A DNA stretch of 64,000 bases from Hemiscyllium ocellatum. Its lineage: Eukaryota. The stretch covers positions 1,639,822 through 1,703,821 of the forward strand of contig NW_026867498.1 of assembly GCF_020745735.1 (NCBI RefSeq), read 5' to 3'. The notes beneath the pieces are model-generated. The model was not told where the DNA came from. It made no database searches and was given only the letters and a program-made list of their open reading frames with translations. Of this stretch, positions 10,660-55,097 are shown one piece after another (within the stretch, counting starts at the first letter, position 1; each line of letters begins with the position of its first letter). A program made the position numbers and the translations under genes.

Positions 10660-11480
10660 GAGAACTCCCTTGCTGGAGGGTCCCTTGGAGACACTTCAAC
10701 TGGACTTCATTGAGTTGTAGAAATGAGTTGAGTTGCTGTAAATATGTTTTGCTTATTGTTGATGTCTTTTCTAAGTGGATTGAAGCCGACCCTCCTCCTA
10801 ACGCGACTGCTGAGTCTGTGGTGAAAAATTTGTTTAAGGAAATAATTCCTTCAGTATACCTGCGTGCATTAGCTCAGACAATGGACCACACTTTGTAGGT
10901 AATATTAACGGAGAACTCTGTTCCCAGCTTTGTATTTGTCGGCAACTGCTCATCCTCAGGCGGCCGGCCTTGGTGAATGTTTTAACCAGAGTCAAGACTA
11001 AACTTGCCAAATTAATGGCTGAGTCTGGCCTCTCCTGGTTATGCTAATCCCTGTGGCCTCATTCCAGATGGGATCCATGTCTGTGGGCAAGATACGACTG
11101 TCTTCAGCTGAGAATCTCTCTGGTCACCCTCTCCGTACCCCTTGGAACGATTCGGCTCCCTTCTCAGTCCACCTCCACCACATGACCGAAGAAATGGTTG
11201 GTTATGTTCTTGCTTTAACTAGTGTTATGCGTGCCTATCACTCCCAGGGGTGTGCGGCCTGCAGCGATGTTCCCTCCCTTTCAGCCTCGTCACGGGTAGA
11301 GCCTGGTTCGTTGGTGCTCGTCAAGACCTGGACTTGCAGAGGTCTCCAACCTCGCTGGGATGGCCCCTTCCAGGTTTTACTTCCCATCCCTACGGTGGTC
11401 AAAGTCGCTGGGCGCTCAGCTTGGGTCCAACTGCACCATTGTAAATTGATTGACCGCACCAATCAAAAGTGGGGAAGAGG
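10660..11480 (+). mobile_element. Endogenous retrovirus pol integrase remnant (gamma/epsilon-like)
   Basis: GPLETLQLDFIEL, CKYVLLIVDVFSKWIEA and C-terminal QPRWDGPFQVLL..PTVVKVAGRSAWVQLHHCK (GPY/F region). Contains stops and frameshifts. Confidence 0.9.
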
Positions 11481-11949
11481 AGGAGAGAATACTGGAATCC
11501 CAACAAAAGGAGTGGACCCTGTCCAGTTGGGTTTTTGAATTTTGCTGTTGTTCTAATGTTAATCTTATTACAGATATTTGAACTAAGAGGAGGGACATGG
11601 GGGGGGGGAGGGGGGGGATCGCCTATCTCCTCACCTTTCTGATCACATACAACATCCTGATGGGGAAAGCCACTAAGTATGGATGTGACCAGGAATGATC
11701 AGAGATTATCCACCACCCATGCTAAGGAGATGTCGTCCAGTGCACCGGACCAGACGCCTTTGACGTGTGGGACGTGATGAAGATTGATTATTGCAATGGA
11801 CTCTTACATCAGAAAGACCAGATGGTCCATCTGGACAGTAGAAATCAGTGGGAGTTACCATGTCGTTACCATGGTTTTTTGATTTTACCTGCAGACGCAA
11901 GCCTAGTGAGGATAAAAATGGTCAACCCCGTTATTATGGTAAATATTTT

Positions 11950-13442
11950 AAGGATGCCTGGGAACACCATCCCTTTTTGCAGTACGGGCCGACTCGAGAA
12001 AAGGGAAGCTTGATAGGGGAAACTCCACAATCCGCAAACAACTTATTTATACAGGCCCACAGAACGCTCTTCACCCCAGAGGCAGGAGTATGTTACTCCT
12101 CTCTATCAGGAGATGACTTACTTGCCCCGTCCCCAGTCCCTGATTCCATACTATTCGTCAGTCTTCCTGCTGCCGACCCTGCGAAGTGAAATATCACGTT
12201 CCAATACCTCCGGTCTGTGTGTACAAACAGCTGGAGTAACACTGGCTGGGGTACAGCAGGCCTTATGCGGTACATGAACCTGGAACGGAACCCTTCCCTT
12301 GTGCATTTATAGGCCTTTTCTCTTTTCAGAATCTGATATTGTCACCAAGACCATGTACAATAGAGCTAAGGGAGAGCCCAATGGGAACAGCATTCTGAGG
12401 ACCATTGTCTCCTATACAGTGCGGGTGCTCGAGTCACTTGGCCCATTTTTTACAGCGCTCAAGCGAATCCTCTTGCAAAACATCGACCCTTTGCTCCTGT
12501 ATATCTGACCAGACCCCCTGCTGTAACATTTCAGTAACCTATTTTGACAAACTCTCCCTAATCTACCCCAAATCAGACTATTATTTCTTCAGCTGAGGTA
12601 AAGCTACCAATTTCCTTGTCATGGATGGCAAAGATGTCCCTCATAACATCAATATCGGAGCCCTTGTTCCCACAACAGTACCTTGTCCTGGTCAGTGGAC
12701 AAGTCGATGGAACCTCCATCTGAGGAGAATGCAGCGGTCGGTCTCAGCCAACTTTACTCCGACTGGAAGGATCCCAATGGACTGGGTGACAATACAGGAC
12801 ACCCAATAGGCTGGGGAATCCAGAATACCGAGGTTGGAAGGATCGGCAGGGGTGACAAGTCAAAAGAACCGCAATTCCCTCATTTGTGGCCTGACCATTC
12901 GAGAAAATAAAGAGGCTCTGGAACAGAGTAACCTGGGATTATCAGAGCTGTGTCTTTACTCTATGCAGAATCGGTATGGCCTAGACAATATACTCGCCCA
13001 GGAGGGTGAGGTCTGCACCACTGTCCAAGATAAATGCACTATGGGCATTCCCGATCTAACTGGCAATATTACTAAGATACAAGAAGAGATCCAGGTATTC
13101 CTTGACAGAATGACTGAAGGGACCAGTTGGGGAAACTGCAGGTCGGGCTGATGGTACAATTGACATATCAATTTAGATATTTATGTTTGTCGGTATTGGT
13201 ATTGTTAGGTATTTAATTGCTCGGCTTATGAGGTCCCTTAGAGATATAGATTTGCCCCAGAAGATGCTCCTTTTGCGATCCGATGGCTCACCCACGTGTC
13301 GATGGCGATGATAAATATGACCAGATGAGCTGCGAAGATGGTGGTGCCGCTCTACAGGATGTTGATGGCTGGACCACCTTGAAGGGCATTCGTTTGGACT
13401 AGCCTTCTCTTTCAGTGATCGCGGTGCAATCAAAGGGAGGAA
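11950..13442 (+). mobile_element. ERV env remnant (gamma-type TM) and polypurine tract
   Basis: Furin-like RRMQR|S. Immunosuppressive-domain-like MQNRYGLDNILAQEGEVC-TTVQDK-C at 12963. Hydrophobic anchor IFMFVGIGIVRYLIA. PPT aaagggaggaa at 13432-13442 followed by TG. Confidence 0.88.
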
Positions 13443-13860
13443 TGAGGGTGTGGGCATCTGGCTGATAAAGTCTACAGCCTTAAAACTTGTCATTAAACAT
13501 TTAGACTAAAAGGTAATGCTGAATTATTGAATACATTTACTGCACTAGAAAATAAACAGGCAAGAAGGCTCAGAAAGAGGAGAGAACTTAAAGATAGGGA
13601 CACCTGGGCTCACCAAGTGATAACAGGATGCTGTAAGGCAATTAAGAAGGTTTGCCTCAGCATCGGTGAATCTGTGTGAACAGGACACCAAGTGATAACA
13701 TTCACAGCCGTTCCCTTGTGAGACCATTTTAGTGCTGAGGCTGTTGAATCCCGTAGAAAATTAACTCTTAGTGTTTATCTGCAATGGATTGTAATGAATG
13801 GCATTTTGGGACTTTATGATGATATTGAGTAGCCATTACTGGTTATTAAATACAAACTCT
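13443..13860 (+). mobile_element. Putative ERV 3' LTR (3' end not defined)
   Basis: Begins TG immediately after the PPT. No clear terminal CA was found. Mirror copy at about 60750-61167. Confidence 0.45.
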
Positions 13861-13891
13861 GTAAAAGGAAATACTGATAAAGTTTGACCTT

Positions 13892-14455
13892 ACTTGCTGC
13901 AGCCGAGACTCCAGCGGAGGCAATAGGCCGCGGGCACACTTCCGTCTTCGGAACGGCCTCGACCCCGCCCCCTCCGACGCCAATGCGACACGTAAACCCC
14001 GCCCCTTCCGAACGCAGCTCGTAAACCCCGCCCCTTCCGAAGGCAGCCCGTAAACCCCGCCCCTTCCGAACAAATCTCCTAATACCCGCCCCTTCCGAAC
14101 GCTGACAGTAAACCCCGCCCTTTCCGGACGCAGCACGTAAAACCTCGCCCCTTTCGAACGCAACTCGTAAACCCTGCCCCTTCGAGACAAAGACCCGGCT
14201 CTTGGAACCACACCCCGTCGCGCACGAAAACCCACCCCTTTCCTTGGTCCCCGCGCGAATCAAAACCATGCCCCCTACCCTCACGAGCAACCGCGCGGCT
14301 CCAGGCTCAACGCGCCGCATCGCCCGCTGAGCCTCGTCCCGCCCACTAGCGCGCGACCCTCTCCCGAGACACGCCCCGCCCATGAGCACCGCCCTCCCGC
14401 TAAAACAGGCCCCCAGGCTAAACCCCGCCCCTCCTGGTAAACCCCGCCCCCCAGG
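13892..14455 (-). promoter_or_regulatory. CpG-island promoter with GC-box array, ETS site and candidate first exon/donor
   Basis: CpG-rich, many CCCCGCCCC boxes, ETS core ACGGAAGTG, and donor CAA|GTAAGG at 13893. Points toward ZNF B. Confidence 0.7.
13992..14192. repeat. 29-bp GC-box minisatellite, 7 units
   Basis: gtaaaccccgccccttccgaacgcagctc-like units start at 13992, 14021, 14050, 14079, 14108, 14137 and 14167. Confidence 0.95.
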
Positions 14456-14602
14456 TGTATTTGGAAGCACTAGCTTCTGCAGCGCTGCTCCTTCTGCGGG
14501 GAGCTGTGCTGCAGGATCATAAGACACAGAATTAATAGCAAAAGATCACAGCGTCATGCAACCGACGCAATATTTGGAACAAACCTGGATCGCTGCTGAG
14601 TC

Positions 14603-14814
14603 CTTTTCCCATTGTTCGGATAGCGTAAGAATGGATGGACGGCTGTTCACAGCGCACACGCCAAAGACGAACTGAATGAGATCACGCGGGGCCCAAGAGC
14701 TTTTCTGTTCGTACCTTGAATTTCGTATGTACATTGAAGCAAAATTTTCGTACAATCCTGTTCGTAAACCGATTTGTACGTGAACGGGTTTGTTCGTATG
14801 TCGAGGCGCTACTG
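14603..14814. mobile_element. Truncated Tigger/pogo-like MITE (one TIR left)
   Basis: Reverse complement of 50045-50257. Retains TIR gttcgtatgtcgaggcgctactg. The other end was removed by the 9.8-kb deletion. Confidence 0.85.
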
Positions 14815-15524
14815 TGCTCTGTAAAAAGAGATTACAAAGGTCATTAGTGCAGGGTAGAAATTCAGAACAAGCAATTCTACTTTCTGTGGAATATTCTTTT
14901 CTTTTGTTATTCCACAAAATTGAAAGCACATCCCACTCTCCCTCCCCCTCTGTTCTCACTCGGCTCGAACTAATTCCCCTGAAGGTGCTGATTCAGGATC
15001 TTACGGGACAGAAAAGCAAAAACATCAAGACTGCCGTGTCTCTGAACTTTGGATACCTCCGCCTGAAAGCTAATATCTTTCACAATACTGGGATACTGCT
15101 GAGAGTGAGCAGGTCTGATTTTGGGAAGCAAAAAGAAAGTGTCAATTCAGGGTGAACCTGCCACGCAGCTTCTTGAGGAAGGACCAGAGACAAAATAGTT
15201 AACGGCCCCAGGAAGGTGGGAGCAAAATGAGACGTCAAGGCATTAACATTGAAAGTAGAGAGAAAGTCAACCTCCTGACTCTGGCAAACGCCAGAGTTAT
15301 AGAGATACATAGCACAGAAGCAGACCCTTCTGTCCAACACAATTGTACTGACCAGATATCCTAAATTAATCTAGTCCCATTTGCTGGCATGTGGCCCATA
15401 GCTGGGATCATCCCCACCCCCTGTCCTGAGACCTTGATGCCTCCAAGCTGACCCTCGAAGGTTTCGTTTGTCCTCCATTCTTTCCCAGTTGTCTTCTGTA
15501 GGTTTTGAAAACTTTCCCAATCCT

Positions 15525-16140
15525 CTGAGTATAGGATTTGGGAAGTTATGTTGTGGCTGTACAGGACATTGGTTAGGCCACATTTGGAATATTGTGTGCA
15601 ATTCTGGTTTCCTTACTATCAGTAAGATGTTGTGAAACTTGAAAGGGTTCAGAAAAATTTACAAGGATGTTGCCAGGGTTGGAGGATTTGTTCTATTTGG
15701 AGGCTAGGGCTGTTTTCCCTGGAGCGTTGGAGACTAAGGAGTAACCTTTATAGAGGTTTACAAAATTATGAAGGGCATGAATAGGATAAATAGCCAAGGT
15801 CTTTTCCCAGGAGGGGGTGGGTCCAGAACTAGACGGCATAGGTTTAGGGTGAGGGTCGAAAGATACAGAAGAGATCTGAGGAGCAACCTTTTCACACCGA
15901 GGGTGGTACATGTTTGGAATGAGCTGTCAGAGGTGGAGGTTAGTACAATTGCAATATTTAAAAGGCATCTGGATGGGTATATGAATGGGAAGGATTTTGA
16001 GGGATGTGGGCCAGGTGCTGACAGGTGGGACCAGATTGTTGGTCCCACCATGGATGAGTTGGACCAAAGGGTCTGTTTCCATGTTGTATATCTCTATGAC
16101 AGGTTGGACTAAAGGGTCTGTTTCTGTGCTGTATGACTCT
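15525..16140 (+). mobile_element. CR1-like LINE 3' fragment (intronic; paralogues at 25060-25660, 38700-39300, 48720-49335)
   Basis: Motifs LYRTLVRPHLEYCVQFW and RVVHVWNEL...FKRHLDGYM. Confidence 0.85.
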
Positions 16141-16599
16141 GGAACCATTTTATACTGGTCTTAAACCATGTTCTCGCCTTCCCCCACAAACATCCACTTC
16201 TTTGTTCAAAAATCAGATGAACTCAGCATTGAATATACTCAATGACACCCTAACTGCAGGAAGACATCCCACTTGTGAACTCAATTCCTCTTGCTAATAT
16301 AACGCTTGCCTTGCCGATTGCTTCCTACATCTGTCTGACAACTGGCAGTGACTGGAGTAGGAGGACACTGAGGCCTCTTTGCCCATCCACACATCAGTCT
16401 AGATGAAGGGCTCGTGCCCAAAACGTCAACACACCTGTTCCTATGATGCTGCCTAACCTACCGTGCTCTTCCAGTACCACAATGTTTGACCCTGATCTTC
16501 AGCATCTGCAGTTCTCACTTTCTCCACATTCAAATACATCTCCATTTAAACAATGCACCTCCTTTCTGTTTTTCTTTGCCACAGCCAAAGCTATAATTT

Positions 16600-17065
16600 C
16601 ATATTGTGGTCCTGTGTTTGCCAATTGTGGTCCTCTCTATATCGGGGAGAGCGAGCGCAAACTTGGGGAACGGTTCACTGAGCATCACAGCTGGGTCCAC
16701 AGAGCCGACAAGACCTCCCAGTCACCACCCATTACAATTCCCTTTTCTGACATGACCATCTTTGGCCTCCTCCATTGCCACAACGAACCTAACTGCAAAT
16801 TGGAGGGACCACACCTCATCTTCCAGGCAGCCTACAGCCTGAAGGACTCAACGTTGAGTTTTCCAATTTCAAAAAAACCTCCCTCCTTGTTCTTTGCCAG
16901 CAACCACATGCATTCCTCCCATTGACCAACCAGGTCGTAGCCTCTACCTGTCTTGACCTATCTCCACTTCACTCCCACCCCCTTTATGTGCAGCTTCTCC
17001 AGCCAGCCCCAGCCCCAGCCCCGAGGAAGGGTTACACCTGAAACGTCGACTTCTCCACCTCCTGT
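16600..17065 (+). mobile_element. Old Penelope-like GIY-YIG 3' fragment (paralogues at about 23880-24330, 40030-40500, 47800-48240)
   Basis: CGPLYIGESERKLGERFTEH...FGLLHC...KLEGPHLIF, ending in a decayed hammerhead-like gaagggttacacctgaaacgtcgac. Confidence 0.75.
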
Positions 17066-17212
17066 CTATTTTGCAAATTGAGACACAGACCTGGACCAGC
17101 GTTTCCAGAGTCTGTCCCCTTCTGGATTCACTCTCTTTTCTTTCAGTTGCTGCAAGTCAACAACTGAACCCCAGAATGAAAAAGACATGGAATGGGAGCA
17201 AAATAGTGCCGT

Positions 17213-17560
17213 ACTCACAGATCTGGGACAGAGGAAGGAATGTGCAGTCTGGGTAAAGCTCTGTCTTTATTCAGAGAGAGAGGATCAGGAGCTGCAGCTT
17301 GAGAAGCTCATGGTCCGACTTCCGCATTCAGACAATGGGCTGACTCTGATTGACAGAAGGACCAGGCTCCTTCCGGTCCTCCAAGGTTGCCTATTGGTCC
17401 ATCAAAAGAAGGTTTCGCGCCTTTTTTGCGTACAGCGATGAGCATGCTCAGTGTTTTGCTGACACTGGTAAGCATGCGCACTGCGTTGCTGACACTGGCA
17501 AACATGCGCAGTATGCTCTATGGGGATGTTGGTGTTCCTGACAGATTTTAAGTGTCCAAA
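17213..17560 (-). promoter_or_regulatory. ZNF promoter module (3x NRF1-like, E2F-like, 2x CCAAT, ETS) plus non-coding exon and intact donor; its ZNF exon is deleted
   Basis: gcatgcgca-type repeats about 30 bp apart, tttcgcgc, ctattgg and ctgattg, cttccgc, and donor ATCT|GTGAGT at 17218. Confidence 0.65.
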
Positions 17561-18019
17561 TGCTAACGGGGGAAAAAAAGAGAGCCACAATTTTTTTTTC
17601 CTGCGGCTCGATATTTGATTTCTTTTGCATTTTGTCTGGCTGCTCAACTTTTGTATGTCGTTTCCCCTTGTTGTGGGGGCAAGGCACCGAGACCAGAACT
17701 GGAGGGCATAGGTTTAGGGTGAGAGGGGAAAGATTTCTGAGGGTACTAAGGGGCAATCCTTTCACACAGAGGGTGGTATGTGGATGGAATGAACTGTCAG
17801 ATGACGTGGTGGGGGCTGGTACAATTACATCATCTGGATGGGGATATGAATAGGAAAGATTCAGAGGGATAAGAGGCGACATGCTGGCATCTGGTCGACA
17901 TAGACTGAAGGGTTTGTTTCTGTGCTCTACAGCTCTGTGACTCTATTTTTAGATAGTATGGAAAATAAAGAGCATGAAAGCATGGGAAGTGTTAGAGCAT
18001 GGAGACCATTTCCAGTTCA

Positions 18020-18908
18020 TAGAGTCATAGAGAGATGTACAGCATGGAAACACACCCTTCGGTCCAACCCGCCCATGCCGACCAGATATCCCAACCCAAT
18101 CTAGTCTCACTTGCCAGCACCCAGCCCATATCCCTCCAAACCCTTCGTATTCATATACCCATCCAAATGCCTCTTAAATGTTGCAATTGTACCAGCCTCC
18201 ACCACTTCCTCTGGCAGCTCATTCCATACATGTACCACTCTCTGCATGAAAATGTTGCCCCTTAGGTCTCTTTAATATTTTTCCCCTCTCACCCTAAACC
18301 TATGCCCTCTAGTTCTGGACTCCCCAGGGAAAAGACTTTGCCTATTTATCCTATCCATGACCCTCATAATTTTGTAAACCTCTATAAGGTCACCCCCACC
18401 ACCCCTCCAAGTCTCTGACGCACCAGGGAATCAGCCCCAGCCTGTCCCAATAGCTCAAATCCACCAACACTGGCAACATCCTTGTAAATCTTTTCCGAAC
18501 CCTTTCACGTTTCACAACATCTTTCCGATAGGAAGGAGACCAGAATTGCATGCAATATTCCAACAGTGGCCTAACCAATGTCCTGTACAACCGCAACATG
18601 ACCTCCCAACTACTGTACTCAATACTCTGACCAATAAAGGAAAGCATACCAAACGTCTTCTTCACTATCTTATCTACCTGTGACTCCACTTTCAAGGAGC
18701 TATGAACCTGCACTCCAAGGTCTCTTTGTTCAGCTACACTCCCTAGGACCTCACCATCAAGTGTATAAGTCCTGCTAAGATTTGCTTTCACAAAATGCAG
18801 CACCTCACATTTATCTGAATTAAACTCCATCTGCCACTTCTCAGCCCATTGACCCATCTGGTCCAGATCCTGTTGTAATCTGAGGTAACTCTCTTCGCTG
18901 TCCACTAC
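18020..18908 (-). mobile_element. CR1 LINE 3' fragment (mirror at 45955-46840)
   Basis: LQQDLDQMGQWAEKWQMEFNSDKCEVLHF...LVRPLLEYCMQFWSP. Confidence 0.92.
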
Positions 18909-19530
18909 AGTTGCAAAGGATAGTGGAACACTCTTACACCAATTTGCAGAGTAAGGTTGAGGCTGAAAGGTCACTATGGCAAGATGAGATAACACCGTTA
19001 GTAAAGTTAGCCTCATCTGCTAACTATCATTATTGGGACAATAAATATTTGGGACATGACATTAAATATCTAATTGTTAGTGAGTAGAGTCAGCCTGCTT
19101 GAAACTACTGACAATAAATATCTAATCATGACATTAGGAAAATATTAAGTAGGGTCTAGAATGAAAGACTGTTGTTGCAAAAGCTGACATTAAATCTCTA
19201 ACCGAGACATTGGAATAACATGAAGTAGAATGTACAACTAAAGAGATAATGGGAACTAACATCACAGGCTTATTGTGTAGCTAGACTGAGGTACGTTGAT
19301 AAATATAGTTGGACATGCTGATAAGCTAACACAAACATGATTAAAAAAAAGATATTTTAAAACCACAGACCCTGAGGTTTGTGGGCATTCGAGAATCTGC
19401 TTTTCGAGTGTCACGGTCTTTTTGTTTGCAAATAAACGACCTACTTCTTGAAGAACTCTCTGCGTCTCCTGGTCGTTCTCTACATTTTATCCACGACAAC
19501 AGTCGGAACCAATTTCATGGTACGAGGAGA
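18909..19530 (+). mobile_element. LTR-like element with possible tRNA-Leu PBS (copies at 22410-22858, 41504-41935, 45345-45955)
   Basis: AT-rich. The paralogue at 41504 begins TGTTG. AATAAA at about 19431 and ...caaca at 19501, then ...ttca|TGGTACGAGGAG, which resembles the Leu-TAA PBS TGGTACCAGGAG. Confidence 0.5.
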
Positions 19531-19949
19531 GAAAGACTCGCGGGGGGGGGGGGGGGGGCAAAGGGTGGGGTGAGAGAAAGACTGGGGGGGACAGAGGGTG
19601 GGGTGAATTTTAACTTCGTACACCCCAGTCCAACACCGGCATCTCCAAATCGGGGACGTAGTTCTTTGAAAGTTGCATCATTGCTGGACAGGGTGGTGAA
19701 GGAGGCGTTTGGCACACTTGCCTTCATTGTTCACACCGTTCAGTGTAGGAATTGGGACATCACATTGAGGTTGTACAGGATATTGGTGAGACCACGTGTA
19801 GAGTACTGAGTACACTTCTGGTCGCCCTATCGACGACCACAAGTTGACTGGTGACCTTATTTCGATTTATAAAGTCATGGGGCGTGTAGGAAAGGTAAAT
19901 ATCACAAGGGGGAAGAAAGGGTGGATCTCCCCTTTTTTTACTTCTCTTG

Positions 19950-20220
19950 GCACTTGGACACAAATTCTGTCAGTAACAGCAGCATCACCAGAGAGCATAC
20001 TGCGCGTGCTCCTCGCCGCACGCATCGCGACTTTCTTTTGGTGGACCAATCGGAAGCCCTGGAGGACCGGAAGGATATAGGTCCTCCTGCCAATCAGAGC
20101 CTTCCTGTTGTCTGAATGCAGAAGCTGGAACACGAGCTTCGGAAGGTGCTGCTCCTCTCTCTGAATGAAGATTGAGTTTGTTCCAGACTGCAACCTCCTT
20201 ACTCCGCCAGTACACCGCTC
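19950..20220 (+). promoter_or_regulatory. Diverged copy of the ZNF promoter module, donor degenerate (mirror at 44650-44925)
   Basis: One NRF1-like site, accaatcg and gccaatcag boxes, and ctgaatgcagaag. No adjacent ZNF exon. Confidence 0.55.
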
Positions 20221-23200
20221 TCTTCTCAACTCCTTTTTCATTTTTTTTTCATTCTGGGCTTCAATTTTTGACTTGCACCAACCGAACGGAAAGGGAAATG
20301 AATCCACGAAGTGGACAGAATCTGGAAAAGGTTTTCATAAACAGAGAGTGGTTCATGTATGGAATGAATGTCCAGAGGAAATGGTGGATGCACGTACAGA
20401 TGCAACCTTTAAAAGACGTTTGGATAAGTACATGAATCGGGAAGGTGCGGGGGGATATGGGCCAAACATTGGCAAGTGGCACTGAAACATAGTCAGCATG
20501 GAATAGTAGGGCTGAAGGGTCCGTTTCTGTGCTGTCTAACTAACTGTTCTGTCGTGGTCTTAAAACTTTCTTGCCTTCCACAATAAACGTGGTTATTGTA
20601 CCTGCATCCAACACATAAACCACTGTCAACAAAAAAAAATCACCTCATCTACACAACATAAAAATCCACACTCTGTTGTTCAAAAAAGAGATGATATATT
20701 GCCAAATGAGACCAGGTTAATTTAGGATATTTGGTCAGCATGGACGTGTTTGGTTGGAGGGTCTGTTTCTGTGCTGTTATCCTGGAATTGTCTCTGGTGA
20801 ATGCAGAAGTCTGGTTGGACTTTCAGAGCAGCTTTCCAAGATGGGTTGCCCTTACTGGAAGCAAAAGAAGTCACAATGAAGTATTTCGTTTGTGAGACAG
20901 CAACTGAGTGAGTGAGTACATCTGGGAGTTTGGTGGAAAGTGGGAATTTATTGCACGGTGGGGATGAAGCCCTACCCTACCCTACCCAGGATGAGACCAG
21001 GCCTTGAGTTGAGGAGAGTAGATTTAGGACAGAGATGAGGAGGGACTGCTTTTCCCAGAGAGTAGTCAATCCATGGAATTCCCTGCCCAAGGAAGCAGTA
21101 GAGGCATCTTCATTAAGAATATTCAAAACACAGTTGGATGGGTATTTGCATGGTATGGGAATTAAGGGTAATTGGGACAATGCATGGAGGAGGATCTCAG
21201 ATGACGCATATATCAGCCATGATCATAATGAATGGTGGAGCAGGTTCGATGGGCCAAATGGCCAACTACTACTTCTTTTACTATGAAACTCTAACCCTGC
21301 ATTTCCCATGGCTACCCCACCTAACCTTCACATGCCTGTACATTATGGACAATTTAGCATGACCAATCCAAATCAAGGCCGGTGAGCAATGTAGTGATGT
21401 GGAAAATGAACATCAGAGAACGATAGAAAGGGACAAGGTGAGTAAATGTACCAGCAATCAAAACCGGATTCTGAAGATCACAAAACTTGAAACTAAAAAC
21501 GATGTTTCTGAATGTGTGGTGCATTGTAACAAAATTGACTGCACACATTGAAGAGAATAATTATGATCTGAGACTCCTTACAGAGGCATGGCTTCAGGAT
21601 GACAAGGATTGCATCCTGAATATCAAGGTGATAGTCAAATGGGAAGCGAGGCTTGGCGCTGCTCATCAAAGCACTGATCACAGGGAAGTCTAGTGTTAGC
21701 TTGGATTCAGGTCCTGATTTCTCTGTCCTCTGATGTCCCTGTACCCACAGAGTAAGATATTGGTCTGTTCTGCTCTGCTGGATTTCTGCTGAAGCTTTGA
21801 CCCCCCCACCCCTACACCTTCTGGAACAATAAAACATTCAGTCAATTAAGACCCAAGCCACAATCCCCAGCCTGTCAACCATCCAGACACACAGTGTAGT
21901 CCTAGCTGGGACTTATGATTTATAACAGCTATGATTTATAAAAATATTTACGCCAGCAGAATTAAAGCATCCGTTATCAAATAGACATCGGGATATACAG
22001 CACGCAATAGACTTTACTCTGTCTCATTCACACACATAAACACGTACATCCATGGGAGTGAATTTGTATTTGCAGAATTATATTTGCAGATACATTCTAT
22101 TTTTCTCAAAATATGCACACCCTGCAGGCTGTTTAATCAGTTTGACCTATACTGATAACTTCAGGGATTTCTGAACTTGGACAGCAAAGACCCTTTGTTC
22201 CTCAGCACTCTGTAGGGATCTACTATTTATTACTTCCTTCCTTCTCTTATTAAATTTCGCAGAATGCCTGGAGATTAAATTCCATAGTTCTGCCCCATTT
22301 ACGAGCTGATAGATATCAGAGTGTATCCAGAGACCATCCTTTTCCCTAGGAACAATACAACCTTTCCAGCGTTTATTCCTGGACAGAGGAGGCAGTGTTT
22401 TCTCCAGCTGAGCAGTGTGTTTGTTAGCATGTCCAACTATATTAATCAAAAGTTCCTCACGCTAGCTACACAATAAACCAGTGATTTTAGTTCCCATTAT
22501 CTCTTTATTTGTGCCCTCACAGTTTTTCCTACATTCTACTTAATGTTATTCTAATGTCACAGTTGGAGATTTAATGTCAGCTTTTGCAACAACGGTCTTG
22601 CATTCCAGACCCTACTTAATATTTTCCTAATGTAATGATTAGATATTTATTATCAATAGTCTCAAGCAGGCTGACTCTACTCATTATTAATCAGATATTT
22701 GATGTCATGTCCCAAATATTTATTGTTCCCGTCCTGTCAATCATATTTAGCAGGTGAGGCTAACTTTACTGAATGTTATCTCATCTTGCCATAGTGACCT
22801 TTCAGCCTCAACCTTACTCTGCTAATTGGTGTAAGAGCTTTCCACTATCCTTTGCAACAAATTGGCAGTAGTCTCCATGTTCTAACCCTTCCCATGCTTT
22901 CATGCTCTTTATTTTCCATACTATCTAAAGATAGACTCAGAGTTGTAGAGCACAGAAACAGACCCTGCGGTCCACGCTGACCAGATGTCCCAATTAATCT
23001 AGTGATCCATTTGTCAGCATGTCACCCCTTACCCCTCTGAATCTTTCCTATCCATATCCGCATTCAGATGCATTTTAAATACTGTAATTGCACCAGCCTC
23101 CACCACTTCCTCTGGCAGCTCATTCCATACACATACCACCCTCTGTGCGAAAGGATTGCCCCTTAGGACCCTCAGAAATCTTTCCCCTCTCACCCTAAAC

Positions 23201-23339
23201 CTATGCCCTCCAGTTCTGGTCTCGGTGCCTTGCCCCCACAACAAGGGGAAACGACATACAAAAGTTGAGCAGCCAGACAAAATGCAAAAGGAATAAAATA
23301 TCGAGATAAAGGCAAAACAAATTGTGGCTCTATCTTTTC

Positions 23340-23700
23340 ACCCCGTTGGCATTTGGACACTTAAAATCTGTCAGGAACACCAACATCCCCAGAGAGCATA
23401 CTGCGAATGTTTGCTGGTGTCAGCAACGCAGTGCGCATGCAGTCTAGTATCAGCAAAACACTGAGCATGCTCATCGCTGGACGCAAAAAAGGCGCGAGAC
23501 CTTTTTTTGGTTGGCCAATAGGCAATGTTGGAGGACTGGAAGGAGTCTGGTCCTCCTGCCAATCAGAGTCAGCCCATTGTCTGAATGCGGAAGTTGGACC
23601 ATGAACTTCTCAAGCTGCAGCTCCTGATCCTCTCTCTCTGAATAAAGATAGAGCTTTACCCAGACTGCACATTCCTTCCTCTGTCCCAGATCTGAGAGTC
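23340..23700 (+). promoter_or_regulatory. ZNF promoter module upstream of gene C; donor mutated GT>GA
   Basis: gtgcgcatgc, ggcgcgag, ccaatag, ccaatcag and gcggaagt. Reads ccagatct|GAGAGTC at 23694 where paralogues read |GTGAGTAC. Confidence 0.65.
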
Positions 23701-24671
23701 AGGCACTCTCTTATCTCGCCCCCTTTTCCATTTCTTTTTCATTCTGTAGTTCAGTTGTTGACTTGCAGCAACTGAAAGGAAAGAGTGAATTCGGCAGGGA
23801 CAGACTCCGGAAACGTTGATCCAGGTCTGTATCTCAATTGGCAAAATAGTTAGGCAGGAGGCATCAGATGGTGGAGAAGTCGACGAATCGGTTGTAACCC
23901 TTCTTCAGGGCTGGGGCTGGGTGCAGAAGCTGCAGAGAAAAGGGGGTGGGGATGAAGTGGGAAAAGGTCAAGACAGTTAGAGGGTACGACCTGGTTGGTC
24001 AATCGGAGGAATGAATCTTGTTGGTGGCAGGGAGGAGGGCGGGGATGGGAATGGAGTCAGGGAATGGAGAGGGAGGATTTTTGAAATTGGAAAACTCAAC
24101 GTTGAGTCCTTCGGGCTGCAGGCTGCCCGGAAGATGAGGTGTTGTCCCTCCAATTTGCGGTTAGATTGGTTGTGGCAATGGAGGAGGCCAAAGATGGTCA
24201 TGTCAGAAAGTGGGTGGGAAGGAAATTGGAATGGGTGGTTACTGAGAGGTGTGGTCGCCCTCTGCGGGCACAGCTGCCATGCTCAGCGAATCGTTCCCCA
24301 AGTTTGCACTCGCTCTCCGATATAGAGAAGATCGCAATGGCAAATGCAGTACCACAATATGAAGTTATAGCCTTGGCTGTGGAAAAAAAACGCAGAAAGG
24401 AGGTGCATTGTTTAAATGGAGATGTATTTGAATGTGGAGAAAGTGAGAACTGCAGATGCTGGAGATCAGGCTCAAACATTGTGGTACTGGAAGAGCACGG
24501 GAGGTTAGGCAGCATCCGAGGAGCAGGAGAGTTAACGTTTTGGACATGAGCCCTTTATCAGGAATGATGTGTGGATGGACAAAGAGGCCTCAGCATCCTT
24601 CTACACCAGTCACTGTCATTTGTCAGACAGGTGTAGCAAGCAATCAGCAAGGCAAGTGGTATATTAGCAAG

Positions 24672-25030
24672 AGGAGAAAGTGAGGACTGCAGATGCTGAA
24701 GATCAGAGCTGAAAATGTGTTGCTGGAAAAGCGCAGCAGGTCAGGCAGCATCCAAGGATCAGGAGATTCCACGTTTCGGGCATGAGCCCTTCTTCAGGAA
24801 TGAGGAAAGTGTGCCAAGCAGGCTAAGATAAAAGGAAGGGAGGAGGGACTTGGGGGAGGGGCGTTGGAAATGCGATAGGTGGAAGGATGTTAAGGTGAAG
24901 GTGATAGGCCGGAGTGGGAGAGGGGGTCGGGGTGGAGAGGTCAGGAAGAAGATTGCAGGTTGGGAAGGTGGTGCTGAGTTCGAGGGTTGGGACTCAGACA
25001 AGGTGGGGGGAGGGAAAATGAGAAAACTGG
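24672..25030 (-). mobile_element. Young Neptune-type Penelope 3' fragment with pLTR (mirror at 39330-39695)
   Basis: Near-identical to 30330-30680. Carries CTGAAGA-agggctcatgccc-GAAACGTG. Confidence 0.85.
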
Positions 25031-26793
25031 GGCTCAAGGGCGGAGGAGCGGTAAGTGGTCCAACTAGTCATGGAGATGTACAGCTTAGAAATAGACCCTT
25101 CGGTTCAACCTGTTAATGCCAACCAGATATCCCAACCCAATCTCATCCCAACTGCCAGCATTTGGCCCATATCCCTTCAAACCCTTCCTATTCATACACC
25201 TGTCCAGATGTCTTTTAAATGTTGCAATTGTACTGGCCTCCACCATTTCCTCTGGCAGCTCATTCCATACACGTAATACCCTCTGTGTGAAAAGGTTTCA
25301 CCTCAGATCTCATTTGTATCTATTCCCCTCACTCTAAACATATGCCCTCTAGTTCTGGACTCTTTTCTCCCCGACCCCCTCCCCTGGATAAGGCTTTGTC
25401 TATTTATCCTATCCATGCCCTTCATGATTTTATAGGTTACTCGTTAGCCTCCAACGCTGAGGGGAAACAGCCCTCGCCTCCCTATCGATCACATCCTCCA
25501 ACCCTGGCAACATCCTTGTAAATTTTTTCTGAACACTTTGATGTTTCACAACATCTTACCGATACTAAGGAAACCAGAATTGCACACAATATTCCAAATG
25601 TGGCCTAACCAATGTCCTGTACAGCCACAACATAACTTCCCAAATCCTATACTCAGAGGATTGGGGAACTTTTCAAAACCTACAAAAGACAACTGGGAAA
25701 GAATGGAGGGACAAACCGAACCTTTGAGGGTCAGCTTGGAGGCATCAAGGTCTCAGGACAGGGTGGGGATGATCCCAGCTATGGGCCACATACCAGCAAA
25801 TGGGACTAGATTGATTTAGGATATCTGGTCAGTACAGGCGTGTTGGACAGAAGGGTCTGTTTCTGTGCTGTACATCTCTATGTCTCTGGCTTTCCACTAA
25901 CTTTTGCCACGTCAATAGGTTCACTTTCTCTCTAATGTCGGCGTTAATGCCTTGACGTCTCATTTTGCTCCCACCTTCCTGGGGACATTAACCATCTTGT
26001 GGCTGGTCCTTGCTCAAGAAGCTGCGAGGCAGGTTCACCCTGAATTGGCACACTTTTTTTTTTGCTTCCCAAAATCAGACCTGCTCACTCTCAGCAGGAC
26101 CCCAGTGTTGGGAAAGATATTAACTTTCAGGTGGAGGTATCAAAAGTTCAGAGAGATGTCAGTCTTGACATTTTTGCTTTTTCTGTCCCTGTAAGATCCT
26201 GAATTAGCACCTTCAGGGGAATTAGTTAGAGCGGAGTGAGAACAGAGGGGGAGGGAGAGTGGGATGTGCTTTAAATTTTGTGGGATAACAAAAGAAAAGA
26301 ATGTTCTGCAAAAAGTAGAATTGCTTGTTCAGAATTTCTACCCTGCACTGACAATGATGACTTTTGTAATCTATTCTGACAGAATTTTTGAAGATTTGAA
26401 GAGGGAAGTTTTAAAATCAACAGATGAAGGGCTTAAAACCGAAACATTGACCCTCCTGCTCCTCGGATGCTGCCTGACTCCCCTGTGACTTTCCAGCGCC
26501 ACATTTTTCGACTGACTCTCCAGCATCTCCGGTCCTCACTTTGATGTCAATGTCTAACAGTCACTCAGTCCACTGGGGCCAGCAAAGATTTTCGCCGTGA
26601 TTTCTGAGAGAGGAATCAAAGCTTTTTGGTTCCTGTCTGAGTATGTTTTCAGCATCAGTGGGACTGGACGAGACACCCCACTGTTGCAGTGCACTGTGTG
26701 TGGAGCGTGAAACAGCTTAAAAAAGGCCTGGGAAGGGGATTTCACGGCAGGGAGGGGCTCTACACGTGTTTGTGTGCAGCTGAAGCTTTGGCC

Positions 26794-27930
26794 ATGGAGA
26801 AACCTGAGGAATCCCGCCCTGTGGAGAAACCGTGGAAGTGTGGGGACTGTGGGAAAGGCTTCCGTGTCCCGTCTGCCCTGGAGACTCATCGGCGCAGTCA
26901 CACCGGGGAGAGGCCATTCCCTTGCACCGACTGTGGGAAGGCCTTCAGACATTCCTCCCACCTGCTGGCCCACCAGCAGGACCACACGGGGGAAAGGCCC
27001 TTCAGCTGCCCCGAGTGCGGGAAGGCCTTCGTGTTTTTCTCCGCCCTGTTGGCCCATCAGCGGGTCCACACAGGAGAGAGGCCGTTCAGCTGCCCAGAGT
27101 GCGGGCAGGCTTTTACCAACAACTCCACCCTGCTGAGGCACCAGCGGATCCACACGGGGGAAAGGCCCTTCAGCTGCCCTGAGTGTGGGAAGGCCTTCAG
27201 CTATTCCTCCACCCTGCGGAGCCACCGGCGTGTCCACACCGGGGAGAGGCCCTTCAGCTGCCCAGAGTGTGGGAAGGCTTTTACCAACAACTCCACCCTG
27301 ATGAGGCACCAGCAGATCCACACTGGGGAGAGGCCGTACATCTGCTCTCAGTGCGGGAAGGCCTTCAGCAATTCCTACACTCTGCTGACCCACCAGCGTG
27401 TCCACACGGGGGAGAGGCCGTTCACCTGCTCTCAGTGTGGGAAGGGCTTCACCTGCTCCTCCCACCTGCGGAGCCACCAGCGGGTCCACACGGGGGAGAG
27501 GCCCTTCAGCTGCCCCGAGTGCGAGAAGGCTTTTACCAACAACTCCACCCTGCTGACCCACCAGCGTGTCCACACCGGGGAGAGGCCGTTCACCTGCTCA
27601 AAGTGCGGGAAGGGCTTCACCTGCTCCTCCATCCTGCGGAGCCACCAGCGGGTCCACACCGGGGAGAGGCCCTTCAGCTGCCCCGAGTGCGGGAAGGCCT
27701 TCAGCACATCCTCCTCCCTTCTGAAGCACCAGCGGGTCCACACCGAGGAGAGGCCTTACATCTGCTCTCAGTGTGGGAAGGGCTTCAGGTCTTCCTCCAA
27801 CCTGCTGACCCACCGGAGGGTCCACACCGGGGAGAGACCTTACACGTGCTTTCACTGTGGGAAGGGTTTCACCCGCCGCTCCCACCTGCGGAGCCACCAG
27901 CGAGTTCACGTGCCATCGCAGAGGGATTGA
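26794..27930 (+). CDS. C2H2 zinc-finger protein C, 378 aa, 13 fingers, no KRAB/SCAN/BTB domain visible
   Basis: Kozak-like gccATGG at 26794. Uninterrupted ORF of 13 CxxC-x12-HxxxH units with TGERP linkers, ending HVPSQRD*. Confidence 0.9.
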
Positions 27931-28635
27931 AGGAGTGACGGGCGAGTCCCATTATCGATTGGACTATCAACCCGGTTCCGGGGACTCCCAGGTTTGAATC
28001 CCGCCACGACAGATGGCAGACTTGGTATTCGGTCAGAAATGTGGAATTCGGAATCTAACGAGACCATTTCAGGGAGGAGGTGGTGCAAGGGAGAAAGCCC
28101 CCATCTGATTCCCTCTCTCCCTTGTTAGGGAAGGGAACCCCCATTGTGGGAAAGGATACACTCAAGTCGTTCCAGCTGCATCCTTTACCCGGTCTGGCCT
28201 ACACGTGACTCCAGACCCACAGCAGTCTGGTTGACTCTACACTGCCCCTTCCTGGTAAAGGAGCGGGGAGAAACTTACTTGGAGACAGGGTATGGGTTGA
28301 AATTGCTGAGTGAGGCAATACTTCCTCCGGGTTACGGCTGTGCCAAGGATCCAATTACAAAGGGACAACTTGGTGCTGGCCAATAGTAAAGACAGTGAGG
28401 GGGGTGGGGAGGGGGCCAGGGGAGGTGTGGTGTGTGCACTTTCACCTTGAGCTGTTCGAAAAGCAACTACTTTTTCTCTGCCTTTTTGCTGGGGGGATCT
28501 GAAGCTGTAACAAAGTTGGGTTGCAATAAAGGTTACCTGAAATTACCACCGGGCTCAGACTCTCATTGAAAGCTTTGAGCTCCAAGAGGTTTTTGTTTTA
28601 AAGCTGCTCATTTATTTCAGCCTCATGCACTAAGT

Positions 28636-30325
28636 TTAGAACATAGAACAATCCAGCGCAGAACAGGCCCTTCGACCTTCGATGTTGTGCCGACCTGTGA
28701 ACTATTCTCAGCTCATTCCCCGACACTATCCTAAAATCATCCATGCACTTATCTAAGGATTGTTTAAATCTCCCTAATGTGGCTGAGTTGACTACCTTAG
28801 CAGGTAGGGCTTTCCATGCCCTTACCACTCTCTGTGTCAAGAACTTGCCTCTGACATCTGTCTTAAATCTATCACTCCTCAATTTGTAGTTATGCCCTCT
28901 CGTACATGCTAACGTCATCATCCTAGGAAAATGTCTTTCTCGGTCTAAACTTTCTCATCCTCTGATCATCTTTTATGTCCCTATCAAATCCCCCCTGAGC
29001 CGCCGCCTTTCCAATGAGAAAAGACCCAAGTCTCTCAGCCTTTCCTCATAAGACCTTCCCTCCAGTCCAGGCAACATCCGGTAAATCTCCTCTGCACCTT
29101 TTCCAATGTTTCCACATCCTTTCTATGATGGGGCGACCAGAACTGTACACAATATTCCAAGTATGGCTGCACCAGTGTTTTGTATAGTTGCAGCATGATA
29201 TTGCGGTTCTGGAACTCAATCCCTCTCCCAATGAAAGCTAACACACCGTGTGCCTTCTAAACAGCACTGTACACCTGGGTTGCAACTTTCATGGATTTAT
29301 GCACATTATTAAGATCCCTCCGCACATCCACAATACCAAGAATCTTTCCATTGACCAACTACTCTGCCATCCTGTTATTCTTCCCGAAGTGCATCATCTC
29401 ACATTTAGCTGCATTGAACTCCATTTGCCACCTCTAAGCCCAATTCTGCAGTTTATCCAAATCCCCCTGCAATCTGTAACATTCTTCCAAACTGTCCAGT
29501 TCTCCACCGACTTTAGTGTCGTCTGCAAATTTACTAATCCATCCACCTGTGCCTTCATCTAAGTCAGTTATAAAAATGACAAACAGCAGTGGTCCCAAAA
29601 CATCCTTGTGGAACACCACTAGTAACTTGACTCCAGACTGAGTATTTTCTATCAACCACCACTCGCTGCCTTCTTCCAGTTTCTCATCCAAACTGACGAA
29701 GGGCTCTGGCCCGAAACGTCAAATTTCCTGTTCCTTGGATGCTGCCTAACCTGCTGTGCTTTAACCAGCAACACATTTTCAGCTCTAATCCAAACTGCTA
29801 AACCACCCTCAATTCCATGCCTCTGTACTTTCTCCATCAGCCTACCATGTGAACCTTATCAAAGGCTTTACTGAACCAAGTATACCACGTCAACTGCTCT
29901 ACCCTCATCTGCATGCTTGGTCACCTTCTCAAAAAACTCAATGAGGTTTGTGAGACACGATCTGCCCTTGACAAAACCATGTTGACTATCTGAAATTAAA
30001 TTGTTGCTTACTAGATGATTATAAGTTTTATCTCTTATAATCCTTTCCAAAATCTTTCGTACAATAGAAGGAAGGCTCACTGATCTATAATTACCTGGGT
30101 CATCTCTGCTGCCCTTCTTGAACAAGGGCACAACATTTGCAATCCTCCAGTCCTCAGATACTAAACCCGTAGACAATGATGACTCAAATATCAAAGCTAA
30201 AGGCTCTGCTATCTCCTCCCTAGCTTCCCAGAGAATCCTCGGATAAATCCCATCCAGCCCAGGGACTTTTCTACTTTCACTCCTTCTTGAATTGATAACA
30301 CCTGTGTGTGACTAACCTCGATCCT
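28636..30325 (-). mobile_element. CR1 LINE ORF2 (RT) fragment downstream of gene C
   Basis: DWRIANVVPLFKKGSRDDPGNYRSVSL...QHGFVKGRSCLTNLIEFFE and VLGPLLFVIFITDL...SKFADDTK. Tail agaacatagaaca. Confidence 0.95.
29693..29790 (+). mobile_element. Short Penelope pLTR insertion in the CR1, with hammerhead core and about 10-bp TSD
   Basis: CTGACGA-agggctctggccc-GAAACGTC. atccaaactg is repeated on both sides. Confidence 0.8.
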
Positions 30326-33300: not shown

Positions 33301-33539
33301 CTGCCCTCCCCTTCACTGATTGATCACACAGCATTGCCCTTTGATGTGAAGGGCACTGCTTGTCACTGGCCACCCGGGTGTTTTCCTATCTTCCTGGTGG
33401 TGGGAATTGAATAAAGATTGGTGCACTTTGTTTCTCTCACTGTGTCTCATACCTGCTCACACACAACATGGTGCTGGGGAAAAAATAAGCACGACCGCAG
33501 TGAGGCGGTAGGGTGGGGGTTAATGTAAAAAAAGGGAAT

Positions 33540-34080: not shown

Positions 34081-34212
34081 GGGAAAAAACAAACAGGAGA
34101 TTTATGTTAGAGCCCGGGTGTCCTTGGAGAAGGAGCAAAAATAAATACTGTCACTATGACAGGACAGGCCCCACATTCCTTCCCCTCCGTCCCCCCCCAC
34201 AACCTGCCTCAC

Positions 34213-34467
34213 CTTTCACCTCCCGGGCCCAGTACCTTCCAGGTGGCCCCAGAGTTGACACAGGGGCCGCCCCACGACCAGTAGAACTCCACCACCCAGG
34301 CGCCCGACCAGTTCCCAAGCAGGTCCTTAACCCCATCCGCCTCCAGAATGTTCACCGGCTCCTGGCTGCTGTACAGCCGGCCGGTGTGGCCGTGACACAG
34401 CAGCTGCGCCAGGAAGGCGGCGGCGGCGGCCAGTGCCGGGTGTCTGCCCCGGGCCGCACGGCGCCAT
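34213..34467 (-). pseudogene. QSOX-family (QSOX1/QSOX2) exon 1, complete copy B, inactivated
   Basis: ATG at 34467. MAPCGPGQTP(+1)ALAAAAAFLAQLLCHGHTGRLYSSQEPVNILEADGVKDLLGNWSGAWVVEFYWSWGGPCVNSGATWKVL(+1)AREVK, then phase-1 donor GTGAGG at 34212. CGHC has become GGPC. Confidence 0.88.
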
Positions 34468-55035: not shown

Positions 55036-55097
55036 ACCCACGGCCCTTGAGCCCAGCATTAAAAATAAATGGAAAACGGCAGTGGCAAAAGAGAGCG

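What the first reader, a model, noticed from the sequence alone, without database searches (positions are those of the whole stretch)
14820..26380. Palindrome inside the palindrome: each arm is an older head-to-head ZNF cassette
Seen: 14820-19330 is a more diverged inverted copy of 22420-26380, and 38000-41935 pairs with 45500-50040 in the same way. The layout is ZNF(-), promoter, about 3-kb core, promoter, ZNF(+). Inference: there were at least two successive rounds of inverted duplication, and the divergent gene pair is the amplification unit.
Basis: partly seen in the sequence, partly recalled or inferred. Interest (0 to 1): 0.7.

Follow-up and report, generated by a model that had tools for sequence, protein, structure and literature searches.

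The report
Nested inverted duplications of ZNF genes
A shark-like zinc-finger gene cluster holds an old head-to-head gene pair that was later copied again in mirror image, a real but ordinary way for such gene families to grow, and only one copy of each gene is still intact.

Summary
14818-19324 is an inverted, collinear copy of 22421-26383, and 37988-41935 of 45543-50041. A four-way alignment gives 86.5-86.9% within an arm (K2P 0.145-0.150) and 97.4-97.7% between arms (K2P 0.023-0.027). 380 informative sites support (outer,outer)(inner,inner), against 1 and 1 for the alternatives. Every indel of 12 bp or more follows the same split. So an old inverted duplication of a KRAB-less poly-C2H2 ZNF gene came first, and a younger, larger inverted duplication came second.

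- The complete ZNF(-)/ZNF(+) layout exists only in the right arm. The left arm lacks 9.8 kb, including the outer ZNF exon.
- The second duplication runs past the gene pair, through a degraded endogenous-retrovirus fragment, to the window edge. The gene pair is therefore not shown to be the unit.
- Nothing marks promoters at the core edges. The core is transposon debris and the CpG islands lie elsewhere.

Two further paralogues (Z1, Z2) and a mosaic Z2 show more than two rounds. Only Z3 and Z5 keep intact reading frames. The window looks elasmobranch. This is a new member of a known kind and of modest interest.

The parts
14818..19324 (-). O_L: outer copy of the old inverted duplication in the left arm. 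It is the upstream (putative intron) region of an O-type ZNF gene whose ZNF exon is missing.
   Evidence: 97.5% to O_R and 86.7% to I_L. It ends at 14818 next to a truncated MITE (14603-14817).
18019..18909 (.). LINE-derived insertion found only in the O copies (mirror copy at 45954-46837).
   Evidence: gap pattern 1100; a weak RVT_1 hit on ORF 18390-19013.
19325..22420 (.). Left core (spacer of the old inverted duplication). It has no internal symmetry and is largely repeat fragments.
   Evidence: 53% of bases hit other places in the window; only weak CpG enrichment at 19401-20200.
22421..26383 (+). I_L: inner copy, the upstream region of Z3.
   Evidence: 97.4% to I_R.
26653..27930 (+). Z3 last exon. 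A conserved polypyrimidine-AG acceptor ends at 26652. The CDS 26794-27930 encodes 378 aa with 13 C2H2 fingers and is intact.
27931..29039 (+). Z3 3' flank and the inner end of the left arm of the young palindrome. It is only about 93-95% identical to the Z4 flank and equally close to the Z2 flank.
29040..36068 (.). Spacer of the young palindrome. It holds a LINE fragment (RT at 29868-30191, minus strand), retroelement ORFs at 30.3-33.1 kb (minus strand), a CpG island at 34.2-34.8 kb, and Z4's ancestral downstream sequence at 34742-35996.
37167..37580 (-). Z4 CDS, the mirror of Z3. The finger array has collapsed to 3 intact fingers plus one fused, broken finger. The frame stays open (137 aa).
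37988..41935 (-). I_R: inner copy in the right arm.
41936..45542 (.). Right core. It carries a 521-bp repeat-derived indel (43660-44180) absent from the left core.
45543..50041 (+). O_R: outer copy in the right arm, the upstream region of Z5.
50042..50312 (.). MITE with 24-nt terminal inverted repeats, found only in O copies. The left-arm copy is cut at 14603.
50696..52084 (+). Z5 CDS, 462 aa with 16 finger units (3 lack a zinc ligand). The frame is intact.
50257..60031 (.). Right-arm block with no counterpart in the left arm (9.8 kb). It includes the Z5 exon and a CpG island at 58.6-59.2 kb.
10617..14605 (+). Outermost visible segment of the young palindrome (mirror 64000-60031). It is the 3' part of a degraded retrovirus-like element: integrase C-terminal domain, an env TM-like piece, and a CpG-rich region with a 29-bp tandem repeat.
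8166..9366 (-). Z2 ZNF exon, a further paralogue with at least 2 frameshifts. It is a mosaic: the proximal intron is slightly O-like, while the exon leader and 3' flank are I-like.
1..934 (-). Z1, a further and most diverged paralogue, cut by the window edge, with a frameshift in finger 1.

Best explanation
The region is part of a fast-evolving cluster of KRAB-less poly-C2H2 zinc-finger genes in what appears to be an elasmobranch genome. The whole CDS of each gene lies in one 3' exon, behind a conserved splice acceptor.

Step 1 (shown). One gene, with at least 4 kb of upstream sequence, its exon and 3' flank, was duplicated in inverted orientation. This gave a head-to-head pair (O type and I type) around a spacer that now measures 3.1-3.6 kb and is rich in repeat fragments.

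Step 2 (shown). The two copies diverged to K2P of about 0.147. Each gained private insertions: a LINE fragment and a MITE in O, and a 360-bp element in I.

Step 3 (shown). A much larger segment was then duplicated in inverted orientation around a 7-kb spacer, giving mirror partners at K2P of about 0.025. That segment held the pair plus a flanking degraded retrovirus-like fragment, and possibly more beyond the window.

Step 4 (the states are shown; their order relative to step 3 is inferred). The redundant copies decayed in complementary fashion. The left arm lacks 9.8 kb including the O-type exon, with a 3-bp microhomology at the junction. The right-arm I-type array collapsed from 13 to 3 intact fingers. 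One intact I gene (Z3) and one intact O gene (Z5) remain.

The molecular route of each inverted duplication is inferred, not shown. Candidates are replication template switching, fold-back at a break, or tandem duplication followed by inversion. The palindromic shape itself needs no function. It is a by-product of local duplication in a gene family that turns over quickly.
For: - Collinear inverted blocks.
- Four-way distances: 0.145-0.150 within an arm vs 0.023-0.027 between arms.
- Informative sites 380: 1: 1, with balanced private changes of 32, 36, 44 and 35.
- ML tree with 100/100 support.
- All indels of 12 bp or more are shared by mirror partners only. The MITE has 24-nt TIRs and occurs only in O copies.
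- Substitution identity between the big arms is nearly uniform at 96-99% from 10.6 to 26.5 kb, apart from one 90.9% window in the tandem-repeat region at 14.0-14.5 kb.
- The within-arm similarity holds in low-copy columns.
- ZNF arrays, strands and reading frames.
- Deletion junction with CTT microhomology.
- Retroelement ORF 81% identical to a Chiloscyllium punctatum protein, with all named hits from elasmobranchs.
Against: - The 3' flank of Z3 and Z4 (27.9-29.0 kb) is only about 93-95% identical, and Z2 is equally close to both. So the centre of the young palindrome has a different history, either gene conversion with other paralogues or an older tail-to-tail pair.
- The outer limit of the young duplication is outside the window.
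- No transcript evidence exists for exon-intron structure or promoters.
- If the big arms underwent arm-to-arm gene conversion, their 2.5% divergence dates the last homogenisation and not the duplication.
Confidence: 0.85

Rival explanations
1. The inner symmetry is not a duplication. It reflects the same transposon families having inserted independently, in opposite orientations, on either side of the core.
For: About 80% of each arm also hits other places in the window. LINE- and SINE-like fragments are everywhere.
Against: Block order is kept over about 4 kb. The 576 low-copy columns are 90.6-91.1% identical. Repeat-derived columns are 85.9% identical between arms but only 57-80% identical to other family members. 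The homology continues through the ZNF exon and 3' flank.
Confidence: 0.02
2. The two duplications are not as far apart in time as the distances suggest. The big arms could be old and kept similar by arm-to-arm gene conversion, as in sex-chromosome palindromes, while the small inner arms escaped it.
For: Palindrome arms in mammals are homogenised by gene conversion (PMC8600007, PMC8981503). The centre-proximal 3' flanks are more diverged, at about 93-95%. There is local evidence of exchange: the Z2 leader is 95.6% identical to Z4 but 91.8% to Z3.
Against: Divergence is largely even (96-99% per 500 bp) over 16 kb. Private changes are balanced among the four copies. 2.5% is far from the >99% typical of actively converting palindromes. 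The order of events (inner first) is unaffected, because all type-specific indels are shared by mirror partners.
Confidence: 0.1
3. The head-to-head pair arose by tandem (direct) duplication followed by inversion of one copy, not by a one-step inverted duplication.
For: Direct-orientation paralogues exist in the same cluster (Z1, Z2, and Z2 vs Z4). Tandem duplication is the usual mode reported for ZNF clusters (PMC2443715).
Against: None decisive. The inner boundaries (about 19330 and 22415) show no flanking inverted repeats that could have mediated an inversion.
Confidence: 0.25
4. The large palindrome is an assembly artefact, either a false inverted duplication or two haplotypes joined head to head.
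For: Palindromic and duplicated regions are error-prone in assemblies. The source and the reads are not available here.
Against: There are no N gaps. The arms differ by about 2.5% in substitutions, many indels, a 9.8-kb block, a 521-bp indel and a different finger number, and they are separated by a 7-kb spacer with its own retroelements. Chimeric-read artefacts give identical arms without a spacer.
Confidence: 0.03

Closest known systems
Human Y-chromosome palindrome P1 with its internal palindromes P1.1 and P1.2
   Same: A smaller inverted-repeat pair sits inside each arm of a larger palindrome, so the architecture is nested (PMC8600007).
   Different: Y palindromes are much larger (P1.1 and P1.2 are 24 kb each). 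Their arms are >99% identical through ongoing gene conversion, and they carry testis gene families. Here the arms are 97.5% and 86.7% identical, show no sign of ongoing conversion, and carry ZNF genes in what appears to be an elasmobranch.
Autosomal palindromic segmental duplication SD12A1 on mouse chromosome 12
   Same: Inverted arms flank a spacer. Cross-arm identity is well below 99% (median 93%). There is no evidence of inter-arm homogenisation, and the duplication history is layered (PMC13688818 abstract).
   Different: SD12A1 is megabase-scale. It is not described there as an old head-to-head gene pair re-duplicated in mirror image.
Clustered C2H2/KRAB zinc-finger gene families of mammals
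   Same: Lineage-specific local duplication of single genes and of multi-gene blocks. Finger number gains and losses, and frequent pseudogenes (PMC2443715).
   Different: No KRAB or SCAN box was found. The growth documented here is by inverted rather than tandem duplication, and the host looks like a cartilaginous fish.
Large X-chromosome palindromes of primates and mouse
   Same: Inverted arms with a unique spacer, carrying duplicated protein-coding genes (PMC8327919, bioRxiv 10.1101/800185).
   Different: Those are kept at >99% identity and are preserved by selection and conversion. Here one gene of each mirror pair has decayed.

Membership tests
Palindromic segmental duplication (inverted arms plus spacer) | Two collinear arms in inverted orientation flanking a non-duplicated spacer | tested here: met
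   Outer: 10617-29039 vs 64000-36069, with spacer 29040-36068. Inner: 14818-19324 vs 26383-22421, with spacer 19325-22420, and its mirror in the right arm.
Palindromic segmental duplication (inverted arms plus spacer) | Arm-to-arm identity above 99%, as in classical sex-chromosome palindromes | tested here: not met
   97.4-97.7% (outer) and 86.5-86.9% (inner) substitution identity.
Palindromic segmental duplication (inverted arms plus spacer) | Ongoing arm-to-arm gene conversion | tested here: inconclusive
   Divergence is largely even and private changes are balanced, which argues against recent conversion. The Z2/Z3/Z4 exon and flank show patchy exchange.
Nested palindrome (Y-chromosome P1 / P1.1 / P1.2 type) | A smaller inverted-repeat pair contained within each arm of a larger palindrome | tested here: met
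Clustered poly-C2H2 zinc-finger gene family | Tandem C2H2 fingers of 28 aa with TGE(R/K)P linkers in one large 3' exon, with several paralogues side by side | tested here: met
   Five arrays with an 84-bp period. The best database hits are poly-ZNF proteins at 50-58% identity.
KRAB- or SCAN-ZNF subfamily | KRAB or SCAN box encoded upstream of the finger exon | tested here: not met
   A fuzzy six-frame motif search of the whole window found none. Pfam scans of the larger upstream ORFs found nothing. These are motif and ORF-level tests only. A small diverged exon could be missed.
Bidirectional-promoter (head-to-head) gene pair | Two start sites close together, usually within a shared CpG island | tested here: not met
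   No CpG island lies at 19.3 or 22.4 kb. The conserved arms are 3.1-3.6 kb apart across repeat debris.
Bidirectional-promoter (head-to-head) gene pair | Mapped transcription start sites | not testable with these tools
   No transcript or annotation data for this genome were available.

The most novel reading that the evidence does not exclude
Repeated inverted (mirror-image) duplication of a divergent gene pair, followed by complementary loss of one member in each copy, may be a regular growth-and-turnover mode of KRAB-less poly-ZNF clusters in cartilaginous fishes. The window would then catch one cycle of it. In that case the head-to-head pair would be a preferred substrate for fold-back or template-switch events and not a one-off.
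Probability: 0.12. Interest if true: 0.45.

Novelty: new member of a known kind. Interest (0 to 1): 0.3.

Why it matters
The region is a cleanly datable example of layered inverted duplication in a vertebrate lineage where ZNF cluster dynamics are little described. Private transposon insertions and indels give an unambiguous order of events. The two cassettes show complementary decay of redundant genes. It adds no new mechanism. It is useful mainly as a worked case, and as a warning for annotation and assembly of such clusters.

Tried and rejected
- The whole-protein search with Z3 was saturated by generic poly-ZNF hits at 36-58% identity and gave no orthologue.
- An exact look-up of Z3, Z4 and Z5 proteins found nothing.
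- A leader-restricted search gave only a few shark hits at 65-67%. The source species was therefore not identified from the ZNF genes. The taxon call rests on a retroelement ORF.
- Rfam found no RNA family.
- KRAB/SCAN motif search: none.
- Pfam on upstream, core and central ORFs found nothing except reverse-transcriptase, integrase and env pieces.
- A search for stop-free stretches shared by all four arm copies did not discriminate and was dropped.
- Looking for symmetry or mediating inverted repeats in the core and at the junctions found none.
- I considered that the 14603/60031 boundary might be the end of the retroviral LTR. I rejected this because a different repeat family spans 59975-60100.
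- I considered Z2 as the missing left-arm O exon. I rejected this because it is only about 78-81% identical to Z5, not about 97%.
Full report
**What the window is**

The window has no N runs, 48% G+C and a CpG observed/expected ratio of 0.42. It holds five arrays of 84-bp C2H2 finger units:
- Z1: at or below 292, minus strand, cut by the window edge.
- Z2: 8166-9366, minus strand.
- Z3: CDS 26794-27930, plus strand, 13 fingers.
- Z4: CDS 37167-37580, minus strand.
- Z5: CDS 50696-52084, plus strand, 16 finger units.

All copies share a polypyrimidine-AG acceptor about 140 bp upstream of a GCCATGG start codon. In Z5 the frame is closed between the acceptor and the ATG. The CDS therefore most likely starts inside this last exon.

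No KRAB or SCAN box was found. Database relatives are generic poly-ZNF proteins at 36-58% identity. A retroelement ORF in the centre (32184-33083, minus strand) is 81% identical to a Chiloscyllium punctatum protein, and all its named hits are elasmobranch. The source is therefore probably a shark or ray. The species was not identified.

**The observation**

Self-BLAST gives three collinear inverted blocks joining 14818-19324 to 26383-22421, and the mirror set joining 37988-41935 to 50041-45543. The inner ends are sharp (about 19330 and 22415). The 3.1-kb core between them has no symmetry and is at least half repeat fragments.

About 80% of each arm is itself old repeat debris. The similarity is still a true segmental duplication, for three reasons:
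- Low-copy columns are 90.6-91.1% identical.
- Repeat-derived columns are 85.9% identical, against 57-80% to other members of the same repeat families.
- Block order is preserved, and the homology continues through the ZNF exon and 350 bp of 3' flank in the right arm.

I aligned the four copies in gene-sense orientation (O_L, I_L, I_R, O_R).

| Comparison | Substitution identity | K2P |
|---|---|---|
| Within an arm | 86.5-86.9% | 0.145-0.150 |
| Between arms | 97.4-97.7% | 0.023-0.027 |

- Parsimony-informative sites split 380 for (O_L,O_R)(I_L,I_R), against 1 and 1 for the other two groupings. Private changes are balanced at 32, 36, 44 and 35.
- The ML tree gives 100/100 support for both pairs.
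- All ten indels of 12 bp or more are shared by mirror partners only. They include an 884-bp LINE-derived insertion (18019-18909 and 45954-46837). A 272-bp MITE with 24-nt terminal inverted repeats is likewise found only in the O copies (50042-50312, with a truncated copy at 14603-14817).

So the inner inverted pair existed, and had diverged and collected its own insertions, before the large mirror duplication.

**The large palindrome**

The arms are 10617-29039 and 64000-36069, around a 7-kb spacer. Substitution identity per 500 bp is 96-99% from 10.6 to 26.5 kb, apart from one 90.9% window in the tandem-repeat region at 14.0-14.5 kb. BLAST's different percentages for the sub-blocks are due to gap columns.

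1. The right arm carries 50257-60031 (9.8 kb, with the Z5 exon), which has no counterpart in the left arm. The left junction at 14603/14605 lies inside the MITE and shows a CTT microhomology. The left cassette therefore has no outer ZNF exon. Either it was deleted later, or it was skipped during a template-switching duplication.
2. The young duplication continues past the gene pair through 10617-14605 / 64000-60031 and is cut by the window edge. The gene pair is therefore not shown to be the unit. That outer segment is the 3' part of a degraded retrovirus-like element:
   - integrase C-terminal domain, E = 4e-12 and 2e-14;
   - weak integrase core;
   - an env TM-like piece at 26.6 bits;
   - a CpG-rich stretch with a 29-bp tandem repeat, which I take to be LTR by inference.
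3. The strongest CpG islands are at 13.8-14.6 kb and its mirror 60.0-60.8 kb. Others lie at 34.2-34.8 and 58.6-59.2 kb. None is at the core edges. The sequence just inside the inner boundaries is AT-rich, without obvious promoter features. Promoter positions remain untested.

**More than two rounds**

- Z1 and Z2 are further paralogues in direct orientation. They share only the exon, 640-700 bp upstream and (for Z2) the downstream region.
- In the shared 444-bp proximal segment, Z1 is the outgroup. Z2, the O pair and the I pair form an unresolved three-way split.
- Z2 is a mosaic. Its proximal intron is 92.5-93.2% identical to O and 90.3-91.0% to I. Its exon leader is 95.6% identical to Z4, 91.8% to Z3 and 80.9% to Z5.
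- In the 3' flank, Z2, Z3 and Z4 are equidistant at about 93-94%, with patchy sharing. That is also why Z3 and Z4 are only 93-95% identical there, against about 97.5% elsewhere.

This points to gene conversion or recombination among I-type exons, or to an older tail-to-tail pair at the centre. I could not decide between these.

**Fate of the copies**

| Copy | State |
|---|---|
| Z3 | Intact |
| Z5 | Intact. Three units lack a zinc ligand. Fingers 8/13 and 9/11 are 99% identical, which points to a recent intra-array duplication. |
| Z4 | Lost most of its array through several in-frame deletions. It keeps 3 intact fingers plus one fused, broken finger. |
| Z2 | At least two frameshifts. |
| Z1 | A frameshift in finger 1. 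|
| Left-arm O gene | No exon. |

Each mirror cassette thus retains a different member, the I type on the left and the O type on the right. This is complementary loss after duplication.

**Mechanism**

The order of events is shown. The molecular route is inferred. The junctions carry no mediating inverted repeats. The one clear junction has 3 bp of microhomology, which fits end joining or template switching. A one-step inverted duplication cannot be told apart from tandem duplication followed by inversion. An assembly artefact is unlikely, given 2.5% divergence, many indels, a 7-kb spacer with its own retroelements and no gaps. It cannot be excluded without reads.

**Comparison with known cases**

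- Nested palindromes are known: human Y P1 hosts P1.1 and P1.2 (PMC8600007).
- Autosomal palindromic duplications with about 93% arm identity and a layered history are described in mouse (PMC13688818).
- ZNF clusters are known to grow by local duplication of single genes and multi-gene blocks (PMC2443715).

This locus fails the >99% identity criterion of classical palindromes, and it is not a KRAB-ZNF cluster. It is best filed as a new example of layered inverted segmental duplication in a poly-ZNF cluster.

**Verdict**

This is a new member of a known kind, with interest 0.3.

Noticed in passing
window 10617-14605 (+) and 60031-64000 (-): Two mirror copies of the 3' part of a degraded gammaretrovirus-like endogenous element. 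It has an integrase C-terminal domain, a weak integrase core and an env TM-like piece. env is broken into many short ORFs. A CpG-rich region follows, with a 29-bp tandem repeat in about 6-7 copies that carries GC-box-like motifs, and this is a putative LTR. The element is 5'-truncated near 10.1-10.6 kb in the left arm.
   Followed up: partly
window 26794-27930, 37167-37580, 50696-52084, 14603: Complementary decay after the mirror duplication. The left cassette keeps the inner gene (Z3) and lacks the outer exon. The right cassette keeps the outer gene (Z5), while its inner gene (Z4) has collapsed to 3 intact fingers.
   Followed up: yes
window 50741-52084: In the Z5 array, fingers 8 and 13 and fingers 9 and 11 are 99% identical at the DNA level, which indicates a recent intra-array duplication. 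Fingers 4, 9 and 11 each lack one zinc ligand.
   Followed up: partly
window 8166-10062: Z2 is a mosaic paralogue. Its proximal intron is slightly closer to the O type. Its exon leader is 95.6% identical to Z4 and only 80.9% to Z5. Its 3' flank is equidistant from Z3 and Z4. It also has at least two frameshifts near 8470-8520, and the first lies in a G run, so a sequencing error is possible for that one.
   Followed up: partly
window 27900-29039 vs 37196-36069: The centre-proximal 3' flanks of Z3 and Z4 are only about 93-95% identical, whereas the rest of the arms are about 97.5%. Z2 is as close to each as they are to one another. This remains unexplained. It could be gene conversion with other paralogues, or an older tail-to-tail pair.
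   Followed up: partly
window 29040-36068: The spacer of the large palindrome is mostly retroelements on the minus strand. A LINE fragment has an RVT_1 hit at 29868-30191. A 2.8-kb element at 30.3-33.1 kb has broken ORFs that match only uncharacterised elasmobranch proteins. From memory it resembles a Penelope-like element, and this was not confirmed by Pfam. The strong positive GC skew at 30-34 kb comes from this element.
   Followed up: partly
window 3766-5330, 34149-34747, 56696-59727: A further repeated segment in direct orientation (87-98% identity). It includes 34-bp tandem repeats (4672-4854, 58744-58836) and two CpG islands (34.2-34.8 kb and 58.6-59.2 kb) that are 95.8% identical. Their role is unknown, and they lie downstream of ZNF exons, not upstream.
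   Followed up: no
window 446-566, 9465-9583, 26423-26542, 37829-37948, 50349-50469 and at least 15 other places: A SINE-like element of about 120 bp is scattered through the window. One copy sits in the proximal intron of every ZNF gene copy, so that copy predates the whole family expansion seen here.
   Followed up: no
window 17441-17512, 23.4 kb, 40893-40965, 47344-47415: A 30-bp unit repeated about 2.4 times and containing a GCATGCGCA motif (similar to an NRF1 site, from memory) lies in all four arm copies. It is part of a larger repeated element also seen at 19999-20328 and 55050-55529, so it is probably transposon-derived and not a gene promoter.
   Followed up: no
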